From Vitrella brassicaformis CCMP3155 (Eukaryota > Protista > Chromerida), in the NCBI GenBank assembly GCA_001179505.1, contig CDMY01000316.1:1-64000 (forward strand): a DNA stretch of 64,000 bases. The letters run 5' to 3'. Under the pieces are notes generated by a model, which worked only from the letters and a program-made list of their open reading frames with translations, ran no database searches and was not told where the DNA came from. Every line of letters begins with the position of its first letter. Position 1 is the first letter of the stretch. The translations under genes were made by a program, and so were the position numbers. Shown one piece after another: positions 39,918-45,181 of this stretch.

Positions 39918-42040
39918 AATACAATCCATTTGCACTGACACACACAATGAATTGATGGGCTGTGGCTGGCGTGTTGTCTGTCTGCATGTGTGATGCCCTG
40001 TCCGTTCTGCAGCAGTCGAATGTGTCTTTGCCGCTGTGGAAGGTGCCGCCCGACACCCTCTCGACCATCCTCAGCCCACTGCTCTGCACGCAGTTCATCA
40101 TCGGCACACTCTCACTCGTCCGCAAGGCCTTCACGACCATCGCCAACGACCCCTCCACACACCACCACGTCCGCATCCAGACTGTCAAGCCCATCCATCT
40201 CACCGACACGCAGCTCCGTGTCTGGTGCCTTCGACTCAGTAAGACCAAGCGTGCGGTGATCACCTGCCCGATGACGGAGAGCATGGTGCGCCTGGTCGAG
40301 GGCATGCGGAACACGCTGACGTTCCTGGAGATGAACGAGCCGGCGTCACGGCTGTGTACCCCGTTCCCAGGAGGCTGTCAGATGAGCGAGAGAGACCGCT
40401 GGTGGACTTTCCGGTGCTTGGCGAGGTGCGGGCGGGCGGCATGTGGGTGCAGGCGGCGCCTCGCAAGCGATGGGCACTCAAGTGAGCGAAGACACGACCC
40501 ACACCAGCCAGGCGCATCTGTGGGCGGGCCTCATATCTCTGGTTTCAGGTCCCTCGTGTCACTGAGCATTCGCGATGGGGATGTCACGCCGCAGTCGTCG
40601 TTTGCCGAGGGTGGTTTCGGTGTGTGGTGGTCCTTCGGGTCATGCCTCCGGTCGCTGGAGTACAACGATAGCGGGTGCACTGCATATGGCGTGCTGCTGG
40701 ATGAGCTGCCGGCGACCTGAAGATACTGCGACTCAGCAGCGAGCGCTTCTGCTTCACCGCCGCCGGCGCACAGCGGATGGCTCAGCGGGGCCTCAGGCTG
40801 GAGGAGGTCGACATCGCCCTGCGTGGGTTGGCATCCACCTCACGTGTCGAGGTACGAGTTCCATTCATGACAGTTCATTCATCAGGCAGATGAAGACAAC
40901 GATGCAGAGACAACACTCTGTGTGTGTGTGTGTGTGTGTGTGCCTATCAAACAGGCGGTGGATGAGGTCTGCAAGTTGTGCCTGGCGCCTGAGGCCAAAG
41001 AGGACTGGAGCAGGAGTGACATTGCTTCGACCTGCGACTGCTGTGGCAGCAGACGGATGATGCCGCTGGTGACACCATCAAGCTGCTGGCCTCCGTCGCC
41101 ACTAGTGTGCACTTTCCCTACTTACTCGACTGCCTTCCAGGCCCCCTCTCCCCTACTCTCCCGCCTCATCCCATCGCTCACCTTTCCTCGAGCACGCTGC
41201 CTGAAGGTCGACGAGTGCAGCCTACCAGAAGGGCCTCCCTATGGCTCGCCTGTGCCTGAGGTGGTCCTGTCTAATGTGTCACACCTGTTTCCACACGTGA
41301 CACGGGCGGAGGTGAGTGATGTGGACGGTGTGTGCTTTGTGTGTGAAGTGAGGTGATGTGTGGCTGTTTCTGTGTGTGTGTTTCAGGAACGCTGCTACAA
41401 CTTCACCTGCTAATCCGGAGTTCCTGACACCAACAGATCCCCCACAGAAAGACCGACAGACAGCCCCCCCCCCCCCAGACTGACCCAACAGAAAGACCCC
41501 ACAAAGAGAGGAAGACCCCACAAAGACAAACAGACTAAACAGGCTGACCCCCGTGTATGATCGGACGAATGCTGACGACTGCATGCGTGACAGACACCAC
41601 ACCGTTGCATGGACGTTGGAAGGTCTATCCCTGATTCAGTCGGTCATGGTGTTGTGTGGTGACAGCGGGGCACGGCACTCGCTATGAAGCCAGTAGAGAG
41701 CCTCGTACTGCCTTTCATCGAGGTGGTCGAGGAGCCGATTGAGCACTTGCTGCAGCTAGACAGGATCGTTGTGGGCATCACTCTGGAGGGGGAGGGGTGG
41801 GAGGGGGTTCTAGGCAGTGACATTGCCACCGCGCTGCAAGAGCACCGGACGCCCCATCCTGACCCAGCGGATGGGCGTCGGCTGCCCTTTTACGTCTGGC
41901 TGCGCGAGTCAGGCTTTGAGATGGTCGAGCTGCCCCGGCTGGCCTTCGACTGTCGCGTAGAGGTCCACCGGATCGGTTTTGTCGATGAGCCGATGCAGCG
42001 ACGGATCACTGACTACTTCTCTGCTTCTCACAGCCAGTGA
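39730..42040 (+). pseudogene. Frameshifted F-box-like/LRR-like family member with a C-terminal PIP box
   Basis: Paralogous to 54359-56467 (KPIHL..Q...W, AV..CP.T, CLA..A.EDW). Alignment to that paralog needs frameshifts near 39840, 40360 and 40710, plus later lesions. Confidence 0.75.
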
Positions 42041-42411: not shown

Positions 42412-42446
<35 letters not shown>

Positions 42447-42635
42447 GGCAGGCAGGCAGACAGACAGACAGACAGACAGACAGAGACACAGAGAGACAAC
42501 TTGAAGGGGCAGCCAGCCAGCATTCTCACTCCTGGCCAATGGCCATCTGCCAACCGTTGGTTGGCAAAACCCCAACGGCTGCTTCCTTTCTTGCCGGAAT
42601 CTCGCGCGAAGCCTCGCCTCGCCGAAAGCATCATC

Positions 42636-43921
42636 ATGTCAGTGGTCGCCCTCGCCGCTGTGTGCCTCGGCCTCTACACCGTACGCCGTGCTGACGGCCA
42701 AGAAGATTGCTTCAAAACAAATATTTGTAGGTGTACGCAGGCCACACGGCACAACAGCAACACACGACTTATCCGCCCTTGCGTGTGTTGCTGTTGCCTT
42801 CGTGCAGGCGTGATAGCCGGCGACACCTTTGCCCGTCCCGAAGGTGATGTGGTGGCAGCCGACGACCTGATTGCCAGGGACGATCTGGTTGCCGATGACG
42901 ATGTGGTTGCCAAGGACGATCTGCGAGTTTTTGGTGACGAGGTGCGGGCCCTAAATGCGGAAGTTAGAGCCAGAAGTAAGCAACAAGCAGCGAGTCCTGT
43001 CGCCCGCTTGTGGACGTGCTTGTCTTCCAGGCGTGACTGTCGGTTATCCTGACATTACCCTCTTCTGGTCCGCTCTTGGCGAGGATGGCGAAGTCGTGGC
43101 AGAGAGCGTCGTATCCGCCCCTCGCATCCGTTCGTATAACGATCCATTAAGAGCTCAGTCACCCGCCCTTTTCAGAGAGCGTCTGAGCGTGATGGACGGG
43201 GGGGACATTTCGGCGGGGAACAGCATCACTGTCGGCAGGCCTGACCCTGACCTGAGGCCAGGCATAACTCGCGGAGAGGGCAACATCGTGGCACAGAACA
43301 CCGTTCTGGCCCAGGACATCTCTGCGCTTGGAACCATCAGCGGAGAAGACGGGTGCAGCTGCGGCGGGCTGACTATTCCAGGGGACGTTGAGCTGAGCGC
43401 CACCGACAACCAGCCGCCGGCAAGCTTCGCAGAGTGGGGCGGGAGGAACCGATCATCTGCTTACGAGGCCTTCAGGCAGCTGCCTGTCCACACCAACCCA
43501 CACAACAGGCTGACGCTGGCCGCCCAGGACGTCAGCCGCCTCTTCCCATCGGCAGTGGGGGCTTACGAAGACAATCATCAGCCGAAGAAGGGCGGCAAGG
43601 GGCGGCCGACGAAGCGCACGACCATCGATCTGACCCAGCTAATCTTCACGCAGATGTCCGTCATCCAAGACCTCCAGGCCCGTGCGTCTGTCATCCCTGA
43701 CCTCCAGGCCCGCATCGCCCGTCTGGAGAATGCGCTTGGCGGACACCAGGGTAGCATCAAGGCACACACAATAGCCAAAGGAGCTCACGTGTCTGTCTGT
43801 CTGTCTGTCTGTCTGTGTCTGTGTCTGTGTCTTTGTGGTTGGTGCAGGCCGAGGCGGCAAGAAGGGCAAGGGCGCCGGTGGCCCACCCTCAGTTGCTGGC
43901 GGGAAGGGCGGCAACAAGTGA
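42636..43921 (+). CDS. Secreted phage-tail-fibre-like beta-helix protein with a C-terminal Peptidase_S74/intramolecular-chaperone-like domain, 4 exons
   Basis: Signal peptide MSVVALAAVCLGLYTVRRADG. Six-residue repeats GDVVAA-DDLIAR-DDLVAD-DDVVAK-DDLRVF. ICD-like LAAQDVSRLFPSAV...TIDLTQLIFTQMSVIQDLQAR..IARLE. All three introns phase 1. Confidence 0.75.
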
Positions 43922-45181
43922 GATGTCTATGTGTCTGAGTGAGTGAGTGATGAGTGAGTGTGTATACATACCCTTTCTGTGTTCACAAGTGCGCACTTGT
44001 ATTGCATTGTATGTTATGGTATGGATCGTGTGGTGAGACAGAAGCGCTTTTCTCTGATGCCCTGACTGACTGGAGAGAGAGGCGAACCAATGGAGGGAGG
44101 GGGGCCTGGTTTGCCTGGGCTCATCACGAGTCTGTGTGTCTGTGTGTCGACATAGTTGTGTGAGTGCCGCTGTACACTTCATATGTACTGGACGGCAGCT
44201 GTCCGTGTCCTTGTCCGGCGGGAGAGATAGGTGCGTGCAGTGCTAGGTCATCCATCGCAGAGAGGGCAGCGAGGAGGGGGGCGGGACCTGCGTATGCGGT
44301 GAGTCTAAGCATCTCTTGGGGTGTCTCTAGATCATTTATTTGTCTGCCAATGTGCACATCCTACTCGTATATTTGTGCCGCTGGCTGCATCCATCGCATG
44401 TGTGTCGGCTCACGAATCAATCGCATGGGACAGAATTCTCCTCCGTCTTGGCTGAAGGGAGAGGCAAGGGGAGAGGAAGATGGTAAGGGCAAGGTCGGTG
44501 CCATGCCGACATTCGGCCGTGGCATGGCAACTTGGCGGCATTGCCCACCTTGTTCGCGCATGGGTTGCTCTGAATTTCGGTATGCATTCAGTTTGATTGT
44601 GGACGTGTGGTTCGGTCGGGTTGTAGTTTATGTGTGTCCACAGACAGCAGTGATTCGTGTGTATGCGTGGCGGGTGCCGGTGGCCTGCCTTCTCTCTCCA
44701 CCCTGATCAATTTGTTTTGCCTTTTGGCTGTGTGTGTGGTGTGGGGAAGTAGGGCCTGCCTGCTGCCATTGACCTGCGTGTGTGTGCGGTTGCTGCAGTC
44801 AGTGTGCAGACGTCGTGTGGTGACTGTGTGCGCATTCGTGAGTACAAGTGCACCAAGCCGCCAAATGGTTCTGTCCACTCATGCCACACAAGTCTCATGC
44901 TACGTCCCGTGATGAGTACGCTCAACACAGAGAGAGACAGAGGGAGAGAGACATCCTGTGATGAGTACGGGGGAATTTGTTACGGGGTCTGCACCGAGCC
45001 CATAAATCAAGAGCATTCCCAACGTCAATCCATCCACCCGTCCCTCGCAAAATCCAAGTATACAGACAACCGCACTCATCAATCAAAAGACACACGAGTC
45101 GCCAGTACACACCATAACAGCAACGGCCGGATGTACGGATGCCTTGGTGACGGGCCTGTCTGTCTGTCTGTCTGTCAGCTC

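What the first reader, a model, noticed from the sequence alone, without database searches (positions are those of the whole stretch)
42636..43921. Domesticated phage-tail-fibre-like protein with an S74/ICD-like chaperone domain, signal peptide and introns
Seen: signal peptide, six-residue G/D-D-hydrophobic-hydrophobic-A repeats, further GDISAG, GNIVAQ and QDISALG motifs, then AYEAFRQLPV...LAAQDVSRLFPSAV...IDLTQLI...IQDLQARIARLE. Established: that pattern resembles the intramolecular chaperone (Peptidase_S74) domain (AL..L.PV, IAQEV..VFPEAV, VDY..L, AIQEL) that trimerises triple beta-helices in phage tailspikes and in MYRF. It self-cleaves through an S-D-x-R-x-K Ser/Lys dyad, which I cannot find here. 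Inference: a horizontally acquired, spliced and secreted trimeric fibre with a retained non-cleaving chaperone, perhaps an adhesin or wall fibre.
Basis: partly seen in the sequence, partly recalled or inferred. Interest (0 to 1): 0.76.

Follow-up and report, generated by a model that had tools for sequence, protein, structure and literature searches.

The report
Algal secreted protein, dead phage-fibre cap
This is a real, spliced and expressed gene of the coral-associated alga Vitrella brassicaformis for a probably secreted beta-helix protein whose tail is a distant relative of the self-cutting "chaperone" cap of viral tail fibres but has lost the lysine needed for cutting, so it probably stays on as a permanent three-chain clamp.

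Summary
Window 42636-43921 (+) is a four-exon gene of Vitrella brassicaformis. Its product is the public 350-aa protein P0001. RNA contigs from two studies skip introns 1 and 2 exactly, and pieces support intron 3.

The protein has a short signal-like N-terminus, hexapeptide repeats and a beta-solenoid body. It ends in a domain homologous to the Peptidase_S74 intramolecular chaperone (ICD). Pfam PF13884 itself never scores. The support comes from PHROG tail-fibre profiles (best 3e-8), HMM searches in both directions, hhalign against 105 viral ICDs (95%, E 4e-8) and fold matches to MYRF, GA-1 and T5 ICDs.

The catalytic lysine is glutamine (Q214) here and is missing at that position in every paralog examined, so self-cleavage is probably lost.

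The family has at least 13 paralogs and was found only in Vitrella. The nearest viral ICDs lie on large low-GC viral contigs and on a virophage, so eukaryotic viruses are as likely donors as phages.

AlphaFold models a single-chain beta-helix, not a triple beta-helix. Trimer formation, secretion and function remain inferred.

UniProt already auto-names the protein an S74-domain protein. This scan had already met paralogs of this family on other pieces of the same genome. Interest is moderate.

The parts
42636..42726 (+). Exon 1. It encodes the start codon, the signal-peptide-like N-terminus (aa 1-21, 42636-42698) and the start of the mature protein, with C25 and the first base of the C31 codon.
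   Evidence: RNA contig joint 42726->42808 in runs X1 and X19. Paralogs carry clearer signal peptides ending AHA.
42727..42807 (+). Intron 1: 81 nt, GT..AG, phase 1.
   Evidence: Skipped in RNA contigs of X1 and X19 and read through in DNA run X20. The paralog P0002 has an intron at the same position and phase.
42808..42975 (+). Exon 2. It holds the hexapeptide (G/D)-D-h-h-A-x repeats, aa 43-86 at 42843-42974, which form the first rungs of the beta-solenoid.
   Evidence: An 18-nt tandem repeat of 3.5 copies lies at 42861-42923. AF2 models short strands E45-E78 with pLDDT 79-92.
42976..43030 (+). Intron 2: 55 nt, GT..AG, phase 1.
   Evidence: Skipped in RNA contigs of X1 and X19. Position and phase are shared with P0002.
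43031..43365 (+). Exon 3, first part (aa 87-198). This is the rest of the beta-solenoid body, with the GDISAG, GNIVAQ and QDISALG rungs and the CxC motif (C195, C197 at 43354-43362).
   Evidence: There are weak hexapeptide-repeat sequence hits (E 0.024; E 6e-4, far below the cutoff). Fold matches to right-handed beta-helices have low rmsd: bactofilin 2n3d Z 8.9 at 3.1 A, 4wa0 Z 9.9 at 2.4 A, 4om9 Z 10.4 at 3.6 A. CxC is conserved in 9 of the 11 paralogs that cover this region.
43396..43413 (+). Vestigial S74 cleavage motif S209-A-T-D-N-Q214. Viral ICDs have S-D-x-R-x-K here. Gln stands at the position of the catalytic Lys.
   Evidence: Alignments A3 and A5. Viral sequences carry SDRRIKENI and similar. 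S and K are invariant in the phage ICDs of A4. Model pLDDT is below 50 over residues 199-215.
43414..43750 (+). Exon 3, second part (aa 215-326): the S74/ICD-like domain proper. It comprises the helix AYEAFRQL, the strand/helix LTLAAQDVSRLFPSAV, the strand TTIDL and a long C-terminal helix (aa 287-323) ending RIARLE.
   Evidence: PHROG tail-fibre C-termini. Vitrella HMM against viral ICDs 1.2e-8, with the best of 702 shuffled or reversed controls at 0.031. Viral ICD HMM against P0001 E 1.4e-4 over aa 251-322. hhalign 95%, E 3.8e-8. Foldseek finds 7dc3, 3gud and 4uw8 and BFVD S74 proteins.
43656..43712 (+). In-frame 30-nt tandem duplication inside the C-terminal helix (VIQDLQARAS / VIPDLQARIA). 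It is absent from paralog P0002 and further expanded in P0022.
   Evidence: period 30, 1.9 copies, 88%. Alignments.
43751..43847 (+). Intron 3: 97 nt, GT..AG, phase 1. It contains a (TGTC)n microsatellite.
   Evidence: X1 record 4 holds 43699-43732 and 43847-43893 within a 107-nt contig. X19 record 18 ends at 43749. The joint was not tabulated because the repeat 43783-43845 was masked. The paralog has an intron at the same position and phase, with 89 of 97 bases identical.
43848..43921 (+). Exon 4: a Gly/Lys-rich tail (G)RGGKKGKGAGGPPSVAGGKGGNK and the stop codon (43919-43921).
   Evidence: The tail is shared with P0002 and P0022. Other paralogs end in GPIEALxK..GLMAP instead.
43922..44879 (+). 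Probable long 3' UTR or downstream block that was co-duplicated with the ICD-coding half of the gene.
   Evidence: blastn: window 43364-44879 is 76.5% identical over 1598 bp to the P0002 locus. RNA contigs start at 43864 and run past 44100; X19 record 19 is 1139 nt long.

Best explanation
The gene encodes a member of a Vitrella-specific family of at least 13 paralogs. These are secretory-pathway proteins made of a variable beta-solenoid 'head/body' and a conserved C-terminal module derived from the intramolecular chaperone domain (Peptidase_S74/ICA) of viral tail-fibre and tailspike proteins.

Shown:
- The gene is real, spliced and expressed, and lies among host genes.
- The C-terminal ~115 residues are homologous to bona fide PF13884-type ICDs.
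- The residue at the position of the catalytic lysine is Gln in this protein and is not Lys in any paralog examined.
- The ICD is followed by a long helix. In several paralogs this helix is extended into long coiled coils.

Inferred mechanism:
- The signal peptide takes the chain into the ER.
- The ICD and its terminal helix assemble three chains, as the ICD does in phage fibres and in MYRF.
- Conserved cysteines (C-x5-12-C after the signal peptide, CxC about 12 residues before the vestigial cleavage site) lock the fold and perhaps the trimer by disulfides.
- Because the Ser-Lys dyad is broken, the ICD is not released. It stays as a permanent trimerisation knob that presents three beta-solenoid arms or a stalk at the cell surface, in the wall or in a secretory organelle.
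- The Gly/Lys-rich tail of this subfamily could anchor it to anionic polymers.

The family most likely arose from one capture of a viral fibre gene (giant virus, virophage, polinton-like virus or phage). It then gained introns and grew by module and exon duplication, with a shared 3' 'ICD cassette'.
For: Gene and expression:
- define the gene and its product.
- One search shows two introns skipped in RNA contigs of two studies.
- Neighbours are Ank, PX and Sad1/UNC genes with no viral hallmark.

Homology to ICDs:
- PHROG phrog_1980 (tail fibre) is hit at its C-terminal end by 11 of 12 paralogs, best 3.1e-8. Four further tail-fibre PHROGs are hit at their extreme C-termini.
- The language-model atlas returns 30 of 30 hits as PF13884 clusters.
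- The Vitrella HMM hits viral ICDs at 1.2e-8, while the best of 702 shuffled or reversed controls is 0.031.
- The reciprocal viral HMM hits P0009 at 6.8e-8 and P0001 at 1.4e-4.
- hhalign against 105 viral ICDs gives 95%, E 3.8e-8 over 72 columns.
- All 8 of the 8 viral sequences tested are PF13884 members.

Fold:
- The AF2 model has pLDDT 84-94 over most of the ICD.
- It matches MYRF ICA 7dc3 (prob 0.98-1.00), GA-1 3gud (0.80-0.87) and T5 4uw8 (0.57-0.66).
- The top BFVD matches are mostly S74 or ICA proteins of phages and giant viruses.
- 7 of 8 atlas rows are PF13884.

Catalytic residues:
- Lys->Gln is seen in alignments A3 and A5.
- The Ser/Lys dyad is essential in endoNF and MYRF (PMC8326128) and described as absolutely conserved (PMC3742443).

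Distribution and constraint:
- An exhaustive search of 1.84 billion representatives found the family only in Vitrella.
- ICD codons give dN/dS 0.36 against the paralog P0002.
Against: - Pfam PF13884 gives no hit on any family member, even at E<=10.
- hhalign against K1F/GA-1-type ICDs is not significant.
- A first AF2 model built from paralogs alone was poor (pLDDT 61) and found no ICD by Foldseek.
- The good model used an alignment that already contained viral ICDs, so its fold matches are not independent of the sequence evidence.
- Trimerisation, secretion, disulfides and lack of cleavage were not tested; no multimer model was possible.
- The signal peptide of this paralog is short and lacks a basic n-region.
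- The alignment around the vestigial cleavage site is uncertain by +-2 residues (S209 or T211 at the nucleophile position), and the model is unconfident there.
- Part of the high ICD identity to P0002 reflects recent duplication or gene conversion, since the intron is equally similar. It is therefore not selection alone.
Confidence: 0.65

Rival explanations
1. The ICD is still an active self-cleaving module. A Ser or Thr (S209 or T211) attacks the peptide bond with a base other than the canonical Lys, and the C-terminal domain is released after trimer assembly, as in phage fibres.
For: A Ser is kept at the aligned nucleophile position in most paralogs. One paralog (P0026/P0010) has a Lys one residue away, and P0009 has His at the Lys position.
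Against: K916A in endoNF and K592A in MYRF abolish cleavage (PMC8326128). No paralog examined has Lys at that position. The parts downstream of the ICD (long coiled coils, conserved GLMAP or Gly/Lys tails) are conserved, which is unexpected for a discarded fragment.
Confidence: 0.12
2. The gene belongs to an integrated viral element (polinton-like virus, virophage or giant-virus insertion). It still serves as that virus's fibre rather than as a host protein.
For: S74 fibre genes are ubiquitous in polinton-like viruses integrated in protist genomes (PMC12220804). A virophage contig (L102) is among the better-scoring viral ICDs.
Against: The gene has three spliceosomal introns that are removed in RNA. 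Its GC content matches its surroundings. The +-10 kb flanks hold Ank, PX and Sad1/UNC genes and no capsid, ATPase or integrase hit; the same holds for the paralog locus. The 13 paralogs are dispersed on different contigs. The catalytic Lys that every viral copy examined retains is lost.
Confidence: 0.04
3. The resemblance to S74 is fortuitous. The tail is only a lineage-specific alpha/beta segment plus a coiled coil with no common ancestry with viral ICDs.
For: There is no Pfam hit. Profile searches against PDB sequences return only coiled coils. hhalign against K1F-type ICDs is insignificant.
Against: Significant hits in both directions fall in the same register over about 85 positions, covering the non-coiled-coil core. 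Shuffled controls score about 20 bits lower. PHROG, the atlas and the database-assigned UniProt name agree.
Confidence: 0.04
4. It is an intracellular, bactofilin-like polymer-forming beta-helix protein. UniProt names paralog P0005 this way. The hydrophobic N-terminus would then be a membrane anchor or an artefact, not a signal peptide.
For: The fold match to bactofilin BacA 2n3d covers 101 of 103 residues at 3.1 A, Z 8.9. UniProt names for paralogs point the same way.
Against: There is no Pfam bactofilin hit. Paralogs have canonical cleavable signal peptides followed by conserved Cys pairs typical of oxidising compartments. The C-terminal module is a viral-fibre trimeriser, not a bactofilin terminus.
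Confidence: 0.07

Closest known systems
Peptidase_S74 / intramolecular chaperone auto-processing (ICA) domain of phage tailspikes and tail fibres (K1F endosialidase gp17-CTD, GA-1 gp12, T5 pb1; Pfam PF13884)
   Same: The domain lies near the C-terminus, after a beta-structured body. The order of elements is the same: helix, strand/helix around the (G)xIAQEV..xP.AV motif (here LTLAAQDVSRLFPSAV), strand (TTIDL), and a long terminal helix ending in a coiled coil. Profile and fold similarity are significant.
   Different: The Ser-Lys dyad is broken: S-A-T-D-N-Q replaces S-D-x-R-x-K. About six extra residues lie between the motif and the first helix. Pfam's model does not score. The host is a eukaryotic nuclear gene with introns and a signal peptide. 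Conserved sequence continues beyond the ICD.
S74-bearing fibre proteins of eukaryotic viruses: giant viruses, virophages and polinton-like viruses (e.g. HaV53_86 / HaV-MAG FhaB+S74 protein, PMC13659346; PLV fibres, PMC12220804; virophage contig L102)
   Same: These are the best-scoring viral relatives of the Vitrella ICD (L192, L155, L174, L102). They share ..YPKAV.. and LTL(D/N)..Q(I/L).YT motifs. The HaV example also combines a single-chain beta-helix (FhaB) body with a terminal S74 domain.
   Different: The viral proteins keep SDRRIK-type catalytic motifs, are usually much longer (700 to more than 2400 aa in the loci seen), lack introns and sit next to viral genes.
MYRF / MrfA (metazoan and Dictyostelium membrane-bound transcription factors with an ICA domain)
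   Same: This is the only well-studied cellular eukaryotic use of the same viral domain. The AF2 model of the Vitrella tail matches the MYRF ICA crystal structure 7dc3 (Foldseek prob 0.98-1.00).
   Different: MYRF keeps the Ser/Lys dyad and cleaves itself. It has an NDT80 DNA-binding domain and a transmembrane segment and faces the cytosol or nucleus. The Vitrella family has none of these, is predicted to enter the secretory pathway, and has lost the Lys. It appears to be an independent capture.
Bactofilin, two-partner-secretion and autotransporter-type right-handed beta-helices
   Same: The modelled body (aa ~43-200) superposes at low rmsd on BacA (2n3d), tapirin (4wa0), Pet passenger (4om9) and FHA (1rwr). 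The repeats are hexapeptide-like.
   Different: There is no significant sequence-family membership. Matches to left-handed hexapeptide acyltransferases have high Z but about 11-12 A rmsd, which suggests the same cross-section with opposite handedness.

Membership tests
Peptidase_S74 / ICA (Pfam PF13884, MEROPS S74) | Match to the Pfam PF13884 model at or above its gathering score (22 bits) | tested here: not met
   There is no PF13884 hit, even at E<=10, for exon 3, P0001, any of 12 paralogs, or the isolated domains. The positive controls K1F CTD (40 bits) and 8 viral CTDs (52-70 bits) do hit.
Peptidase_S74 / ICA (Pfam PF13884, MEROPS S74) | Significant profile-level homology to bona fide members | tested here: met
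   hhalign of family profile A3 against 105 viral ICDs gives 95%, E 3.8e-8. HMM searches in both directions give 1.2e-8 and 6.8e-8, with P0001 itself at 1.4e-4, while shuffles reach only 0.031. PHROG tail-fibre C-termini are hit at 3.1e-8.
Peptidase_S74 / ICA (Pfam PF13884, MEROPS S74) | Catalytic lysine (K916 endoNF / K592 MYRF), five residues after the nucleophile | tested here: not met
   Gln214 aligns with the Lys in both the MAFFT alignment A5 and the ungapped register. No paralog has Lys at that position: it is Q, H, T or another residue. S and K are invariant in the phage set A4.
Peptidase_S74 / ICA (Pfam PF13884, MEROPS S74) | Nucleophilic serine at the cleavage site | tested here: inconclusive
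   S209 (ungapped register) or T211 (MAFFT A5) falls at the Ser position. A Ser is kept in most paralogs. The alignment here is uncertain and model pLDDT is below 50.
Peptidase_S74 / ICA (Pfam PF13884, MEROPS S74) | ICD fold (helix/beta core plus C-terminal helix that forms a trimeric coiled coil) | tested here: met
   The AF2 model has pLDDT 84-94 over most of aa 225-325. Foldseek matches 7dc3 at prob 0.98-1.00, 3gud at 0.80-0.87 and 4uw8 at 0.57-0.66. BFVD S74 proteins match at prob 1.00 with rmsd 3.5-7 A over about 100-140 residues. Caveat: the model's alignment included viral ICDs, and the paralog-only model was poor.
Peptidase_S74 / ICA (Pfam PF13884, MEROPS S74) | Trimerisation-dependent autoproteolytic release of the domain | not testable with these tools
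   This needs protein expression or a multimer model. Loss of the Lys predicts no cleavage (PMC8326128).
Phage-type triple beta-helix stalk upstream of the ICD | Three intertwined chains forming one beta-helix | tested here: inconclusive
   The monomer AF2 model gives a confident single-chain three-sided beta-solenoid (pLDDT about 80-92). A monomer prediction cannot show or exclude an intertwined trimer.
MYRF family | NDT80/PhoG DNA-binding domain, MYRF_ICA and a transmembrane segment after the ICA | tested here: not met
   No Pfam hit to NDT80_PhoG or MYRF_ICA. The only hydrophobic segment is N-terminal.
Bactofilin (PF04519) / hexapeptide-repeat transferases (PF00132) | Family HMM match above threshold | tested here: not met
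   No Pfam hit. The NCBIfam Vat hit is 19 bits against a cutoff of 300. PDB sequence hits are at E 0.024. Only the fold class is shared.

The most novel reading that the evidence does not exclude
The family is a domesticated viral receptor-binding fibre turned host tool. A permanent, non-cleaving ICD trimer would display fast-diverging beta-solenoid heads on the algal surface or in secreted form. It might act as a decoy or receptor-blocker against the giant viruses, virophages or polinton-like viruses it came from (analogous to domesticated retroviral env genes). Alternatively it might be a variable recognition or adhesion system for the coral-associated lifestyle. The shared 3' ICD cassette joined to diverged heads would be the genetic mechanism for swapping heads.
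Probability: 0.1. Interest if true: 0.8.

Novelty: new variant of a known kind. Interest (0 to 1): 0.5.

Why it matters
Outside viruses, the only studied cellular use of the tail-fibre intramolecular chaperone domain in eukaryotes is MYRF, where self-cleavage is the point of the domain. Here an alveolate alga appears to have captured the same domain independently. It has inactivated the protease dyad, put the domain behind a signal peptide and expanded it into a family of about 13 genes.

If the domain works as a permanent trimerisation clamp, this would be a natural example of a chaperone-protease turned into a structural oligomerisation module. It would also mark past virus-host gene flow in chromerids, the photosynthetic relatives of apicomplexan parasites.

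The finding is tempered in three ways. UniProt's automatic annotation already labels this protein as S74-domain-containing. No function is known. This scan has already reported paralogs of the same family.

Tried and rejected
- Pfam, NCBIfam and PDB sequence searches, single-sequence and profile, gave no direct S74 hit. They returned only weak hexapeptide-repeat and coiled-coil hits.
- tblastn of the Vitrella ICDs against 50,697 phage genomes found nothing meaningful.
- The search for related loci with the family alignment in IMG/VR confirmed no relatives.
- hhalign against the K1F CTD alone, a 6-sequence K1F-type alignment and the GA-1 CTD was not significant. The short alignments were nevertheless in the expected register. 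The K1F/GA-1 subtype is therefore not the close one.
- K1F CTD hits a different set of PHROGs from the Vitrella proteins.
- The first AF2 model, of the domain with 12 paralogs, was poor and Foldseek returned only winged-helix noise.
- A bacterial or viral contaminant was considered and rejected, because the gene is spliced and has eukaryotic neighbours.
- Left-handed acyltransferase-type beta-helix was considered as the body fold and rejected. Those matches have high Z but about 11-12 A rmsd, whereas right-handed helices fit at 2.4-4.2 A.
- I did not build a phylogeny of ICDs. About 80 alignable positions at 15-20% identity would not resolve a donor.
- I could not determine whether contigs L192, L155 and L174 are giant viruses or jumbo phages.
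Full report
**What is there**

The window is nuclear DNA of the chromerid alga Vitrella brassicaformis CCMP3155. The source names say so, and an earlier scan note returned says the same.

At 42636-43921 on the + strand lies a four-exon gene: 42636-42726, 42808-42975, 43031-43750 and 43848-43921. All three introns are GT..AG and phase 1, and each acceptor is followed by GC. The conceptual product is identical to the public 350-aa protein P0001.

I searched exons 2 and 3 by reference and then used the database's own record P0001.

Contigs of two runs from different studies (X1, X19) skip 42727-42807 and 42976-43030 exactly, with GT..AG ends. Contigs of DNA runs (X15, X20) read through. Intron 3 borders a masked (TGTC)n repeat, so its joint was not tabulated. 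One 107-nt contig of X1 holds both 43699-43732 and 43847-43893, and an X19 contig ends at 43749.

The hexapeptide repeats also show up as an 18-nt tandem repeat in the DNA, and there is a 30-nt in-frame duplication in the C-terminal helix.

**Family and distribution**

A word-based search found two Vitrella paralogs. An exhaustive HMM search of 1.84 billion representative proteins found 13 strong hits (E<=1e-10) that cover the conserved C-terminal region. The weaker hits beyond these match only the Asp-rich repeats.

Every named cluster member is from Vitrella brassicaformis. The few unnamed ENA and JGI entries cluster with them. No other organism has the C-terminal domain at E<1e-3.

The paralogs sit on different contigs. 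The flanks of this gene and of P0002 carry ordinary eukaryotic genes (Ank, PX, Sad1/UNC, ClpP, PPR, RabGAP) and no viral hallmark.

Most paralogs begin with a canonical signal peptide, for example ...LLVAVCLAVYTLPGAHA|EC. This is followed by a conserved C-x5-12-C pair, and a CxC motif lies about 12 residues before the vestigial cleavage site. P0001 has a shortened version of the signal peptide.

**Is the tail an S74/ICD domain?**

Direct family scans say no. Pfam PF13884 never scores on any member. Sequence or profile searches against PDB return only coiled coils.

More sensitive tests say yes:

- PHROG phrog_1980 ('tail fiber protein') is hit by 11 of 12 paralogs, always at its last ~100 positions, best E 3.1e-8. 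Four other tail-fibre PHROGs are hit at their extreme C-termini.
- A language-model look-up returns 30 of 30 nearest named clusters as PF13884.
- K1F- and GA-1-type ICDs, fetched from annotated phage records, are too distant. hhalign is not significant, although the short alignments are in the expected register.
- I then collected 117 viral ORFs carrying a GFIAQEV motif from IMG/VR. In most of them the motif lies 40-80 residues before the ORF end. All 8 tested are clear PF13884 members with S-D-x-R-x-K motifs.
- The Vitrella family HMM hits these ORFs at up to 1.2e-8 (27.7 bits). The alignments run in one register through ...LG(F/L)(I/A)A.EV....P.AV......LT(L/I)(D/N)..Q(I/L).YT... and the terminal helix.
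- The best of 702 shuffled or reversed controls scores 6.9 bits.
- The reciprocal viral HMM hits P0009 at 6.8e-8 and P0001 itself at 1.4e-4 over aa 251-322.
- hhalign of the two profiles gives 95% probability, E 3.8e-8, over 72 columns.

UniRef's name for P0001, P0002, P0008 and P0013 is 'Peptidase S74 domain-containing protein'. Because Pfam does not hit, this name presumably comes from the PROSITE ICA profile. That is my inference.

**Structure**

A model of the domain built from paralogs alone was poor (pLDDT 61) and uninformative.

A full-length model, whose alignment also held 34 viral ICD segments, reached pLDDT 74 overall. It scored about 80-92 in the beta-rich body and 84-94 over most of the tail, and below 50 at the linker 199-215.

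Foldseek finds the three solved ICD types locally:

| PDB entry | Protein | Foldseek probability |
|---|---|---|
| 7dc3 | MYRF ICA | 0.98-1.00 |
| 3gud | GA-1 ICD | 0.80-0.87 |
| 4uw8 | T5 pb1 | 0.57-0.66 |

E-values for the whole query are weak, 0.05-0.6. In BFVD the top matches are mostly S74/ICA proteins of phages and of giant viruses such as Tupanvirus, Gaeavirus and Edafosvirus. In the ESM-Atlas shape search, 7 of 8 rows are PF13884 clusters. These fold matches are not independent of the sequence evidence, because viral ICDs were in the model's alignment.

The body (aa ~43-200) is modelled as a single-chain, three-sided beta-solenoid. It fits right-handed helices at low rmsd:

| PDB entry | Protein | Z | rmsd (A) |
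|---|---|---|---|
| 2n3d | bactofilin | 8.9 | 3.1 |
| 4wa0 | tapirin | 9.9 | 2.4 |
| 4om9 | Pet passenger | 10.4 | 3.6 |
| 1rwr | FHA | 9.3 | 4.2 |

Left-handed hexapeptide transferases score Z 10-12 but only at about 11-12 A rmsd. I read this as the same cross-section with opposite hand. A monomer model cannot decide between three separate solenoids and an intertwined triple beta-helix.

**Catalytic residues**

Phage and viral ICDs have an invariant Ser and an invariant Lys five residues later. Both are essential for cleavage in endoNF and MYRF (PMC8326128) and are described as absolutely conserved (PMC3742443).

In P0001 the corresponding stretch is S209-A-T-D-N-Q214. Gln aligns with the Lys in both the MAFFT alignment and the ungapped register. 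Paralog P0004 still reads S-D-S-R-N-Q, and no paralog has Lys at that position.

The Lys was therefore most likely lost before the family expanded. Sequence downstream of the ICD is conserved or elaborated: long KANEA-type coiled coils, GPIEAL..GLMAP ends, or the Gly/Lys tail of this subfamily. This argues that the domain is kept rather than discarded.

**Evolution**

Three intron positions and phases are shared with P0002, so the copies arose by DNA duplication, not retroposition.

Divergence along the gene is mosaic:

- Window 43364-44879 covers the ICD codons, the last intron, the last exon and about 1 kb downstream. It is 76.5% identical over 1598 bp to the P0002 locus.
- Within that block, ICD codons are 90% identical (dS 0.21, dN/dS 0.36), and the last intron has 89 of 97 bases identical.
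- Exon 2, the repeat head, is only 57% identical (dS 1.24, dN/dS 0.41).
- An intron and exon boundary of this gene resembles a different intron boundary of the paralog.

This points to module duplication, and to a shared or converted 3' ICD cassette on older, diverged heads.

The donor is unresolved. The best-scoring viral ICDs come from 107-164 kb contigs of 29-33% GC (L192, L155, L174) and from a virophage contig with Sputnik-type capsid genes (L102). S74 fibres are reported as ubiquitous in polinton-like viruses of protists and occur in an algal giant virus together with an FhaB beta-helix (PMC12220804, PMC13659346). A eukaryotic virus is at least as likely a source as a phage.

**Verdict**

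The reading 'S74/ICD-like, non-cleaving, spliced, probably secreted' is supported. 'Triple beta-helix', 'phage' origin, trimer formation and adhesin function remain untested.

The most likely mechanism is a secreted homotrimer held by a permanently attached, catalytically dead ICD and coiled coil (confidence about 0.65).

I found no paper on these proteins. UniProt already flags the domain automatically. This scan's earlier notes describe paralogs of the same 13-gene family elsewhere in the genome and reach the same conclusion.

Noticed in passing
window 43364-44879 vs L002 10734-12214: The 3' half of the gene (ICD codons, last intron, last exon) plus about 1 kb downstream is 76.5% identical in DNA to the paralog locus. 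Exon 2 is only 57% identical (dS 1.24 against 0.21). This suggests a shared or gene-converted 3' 'ICD cassette' on diverged heads.
   Followed up: partly
window 42756-42831 vs L002 10590-10673: The 3' end of intron 1 and the start of exon 2 resemble (76%) an extra intron/exon boundary of paralog P0002. All introns of both genes are phase 1 with the acceptor followed by GC, which fits exon-module duplication.
   Followed up: partly
window 42414-42498 and 43790-43836: There is an (AGAC)n microsatellite just upstream of the gene and its complement (TGTC)n inside intron 3. The same repeat sits in the homologous intron of the paralog.
   Followed up: no
protein P0027 (Vitrella CEL94505.1, 1154 aa): This protein is annotated as tubulin-tyrosine ligase-like protein 9 but carries a family-type ICD at aa 1051-1129. 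A 188-aa MMETSP transcript (P0012) covers only the ICD part. It is probably a fused gene model.
   Followed up: no
proteins P0022 vs P0006 (same Vitrella locus, contig CDMY01000299): The genome annotation (417 aa) and a transcript-derived protein (314 aa) disagree around the vestigial cleavage site and the first ICD helix. This is an annotation error or alternative splicing. P0022 also shows two EV(R/K)ARS|xxVG modules, i.e. a duplicated exon-2-like unit.
   Followed up: no
L102 (IMG/VR contig 3300042806_000309, 21.5 kb): This is a virophage-like contig. It has a Sputnik-type major capsid protein and V18/19 minor capsid next to a >1177-aa fibre gene ending in a catalytically intact S74 domain.
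   Followed up: partly
L155 (IMG/VR contig 3300044637_001954, 164 kb, 32% GC): Two adjacent genes with C-terminal or internal PF13884 domains lie next to a C-5 cytosine DNA methylase. The type of virus (giant virus or jumbo phage) was not determined.
   Followed up: no
window 41684-42040 (+): An annotated 118-aa gene without any family hit lies about 600 bp upstream of this gene, between it and other small unannotated genes.
   Followed up: no
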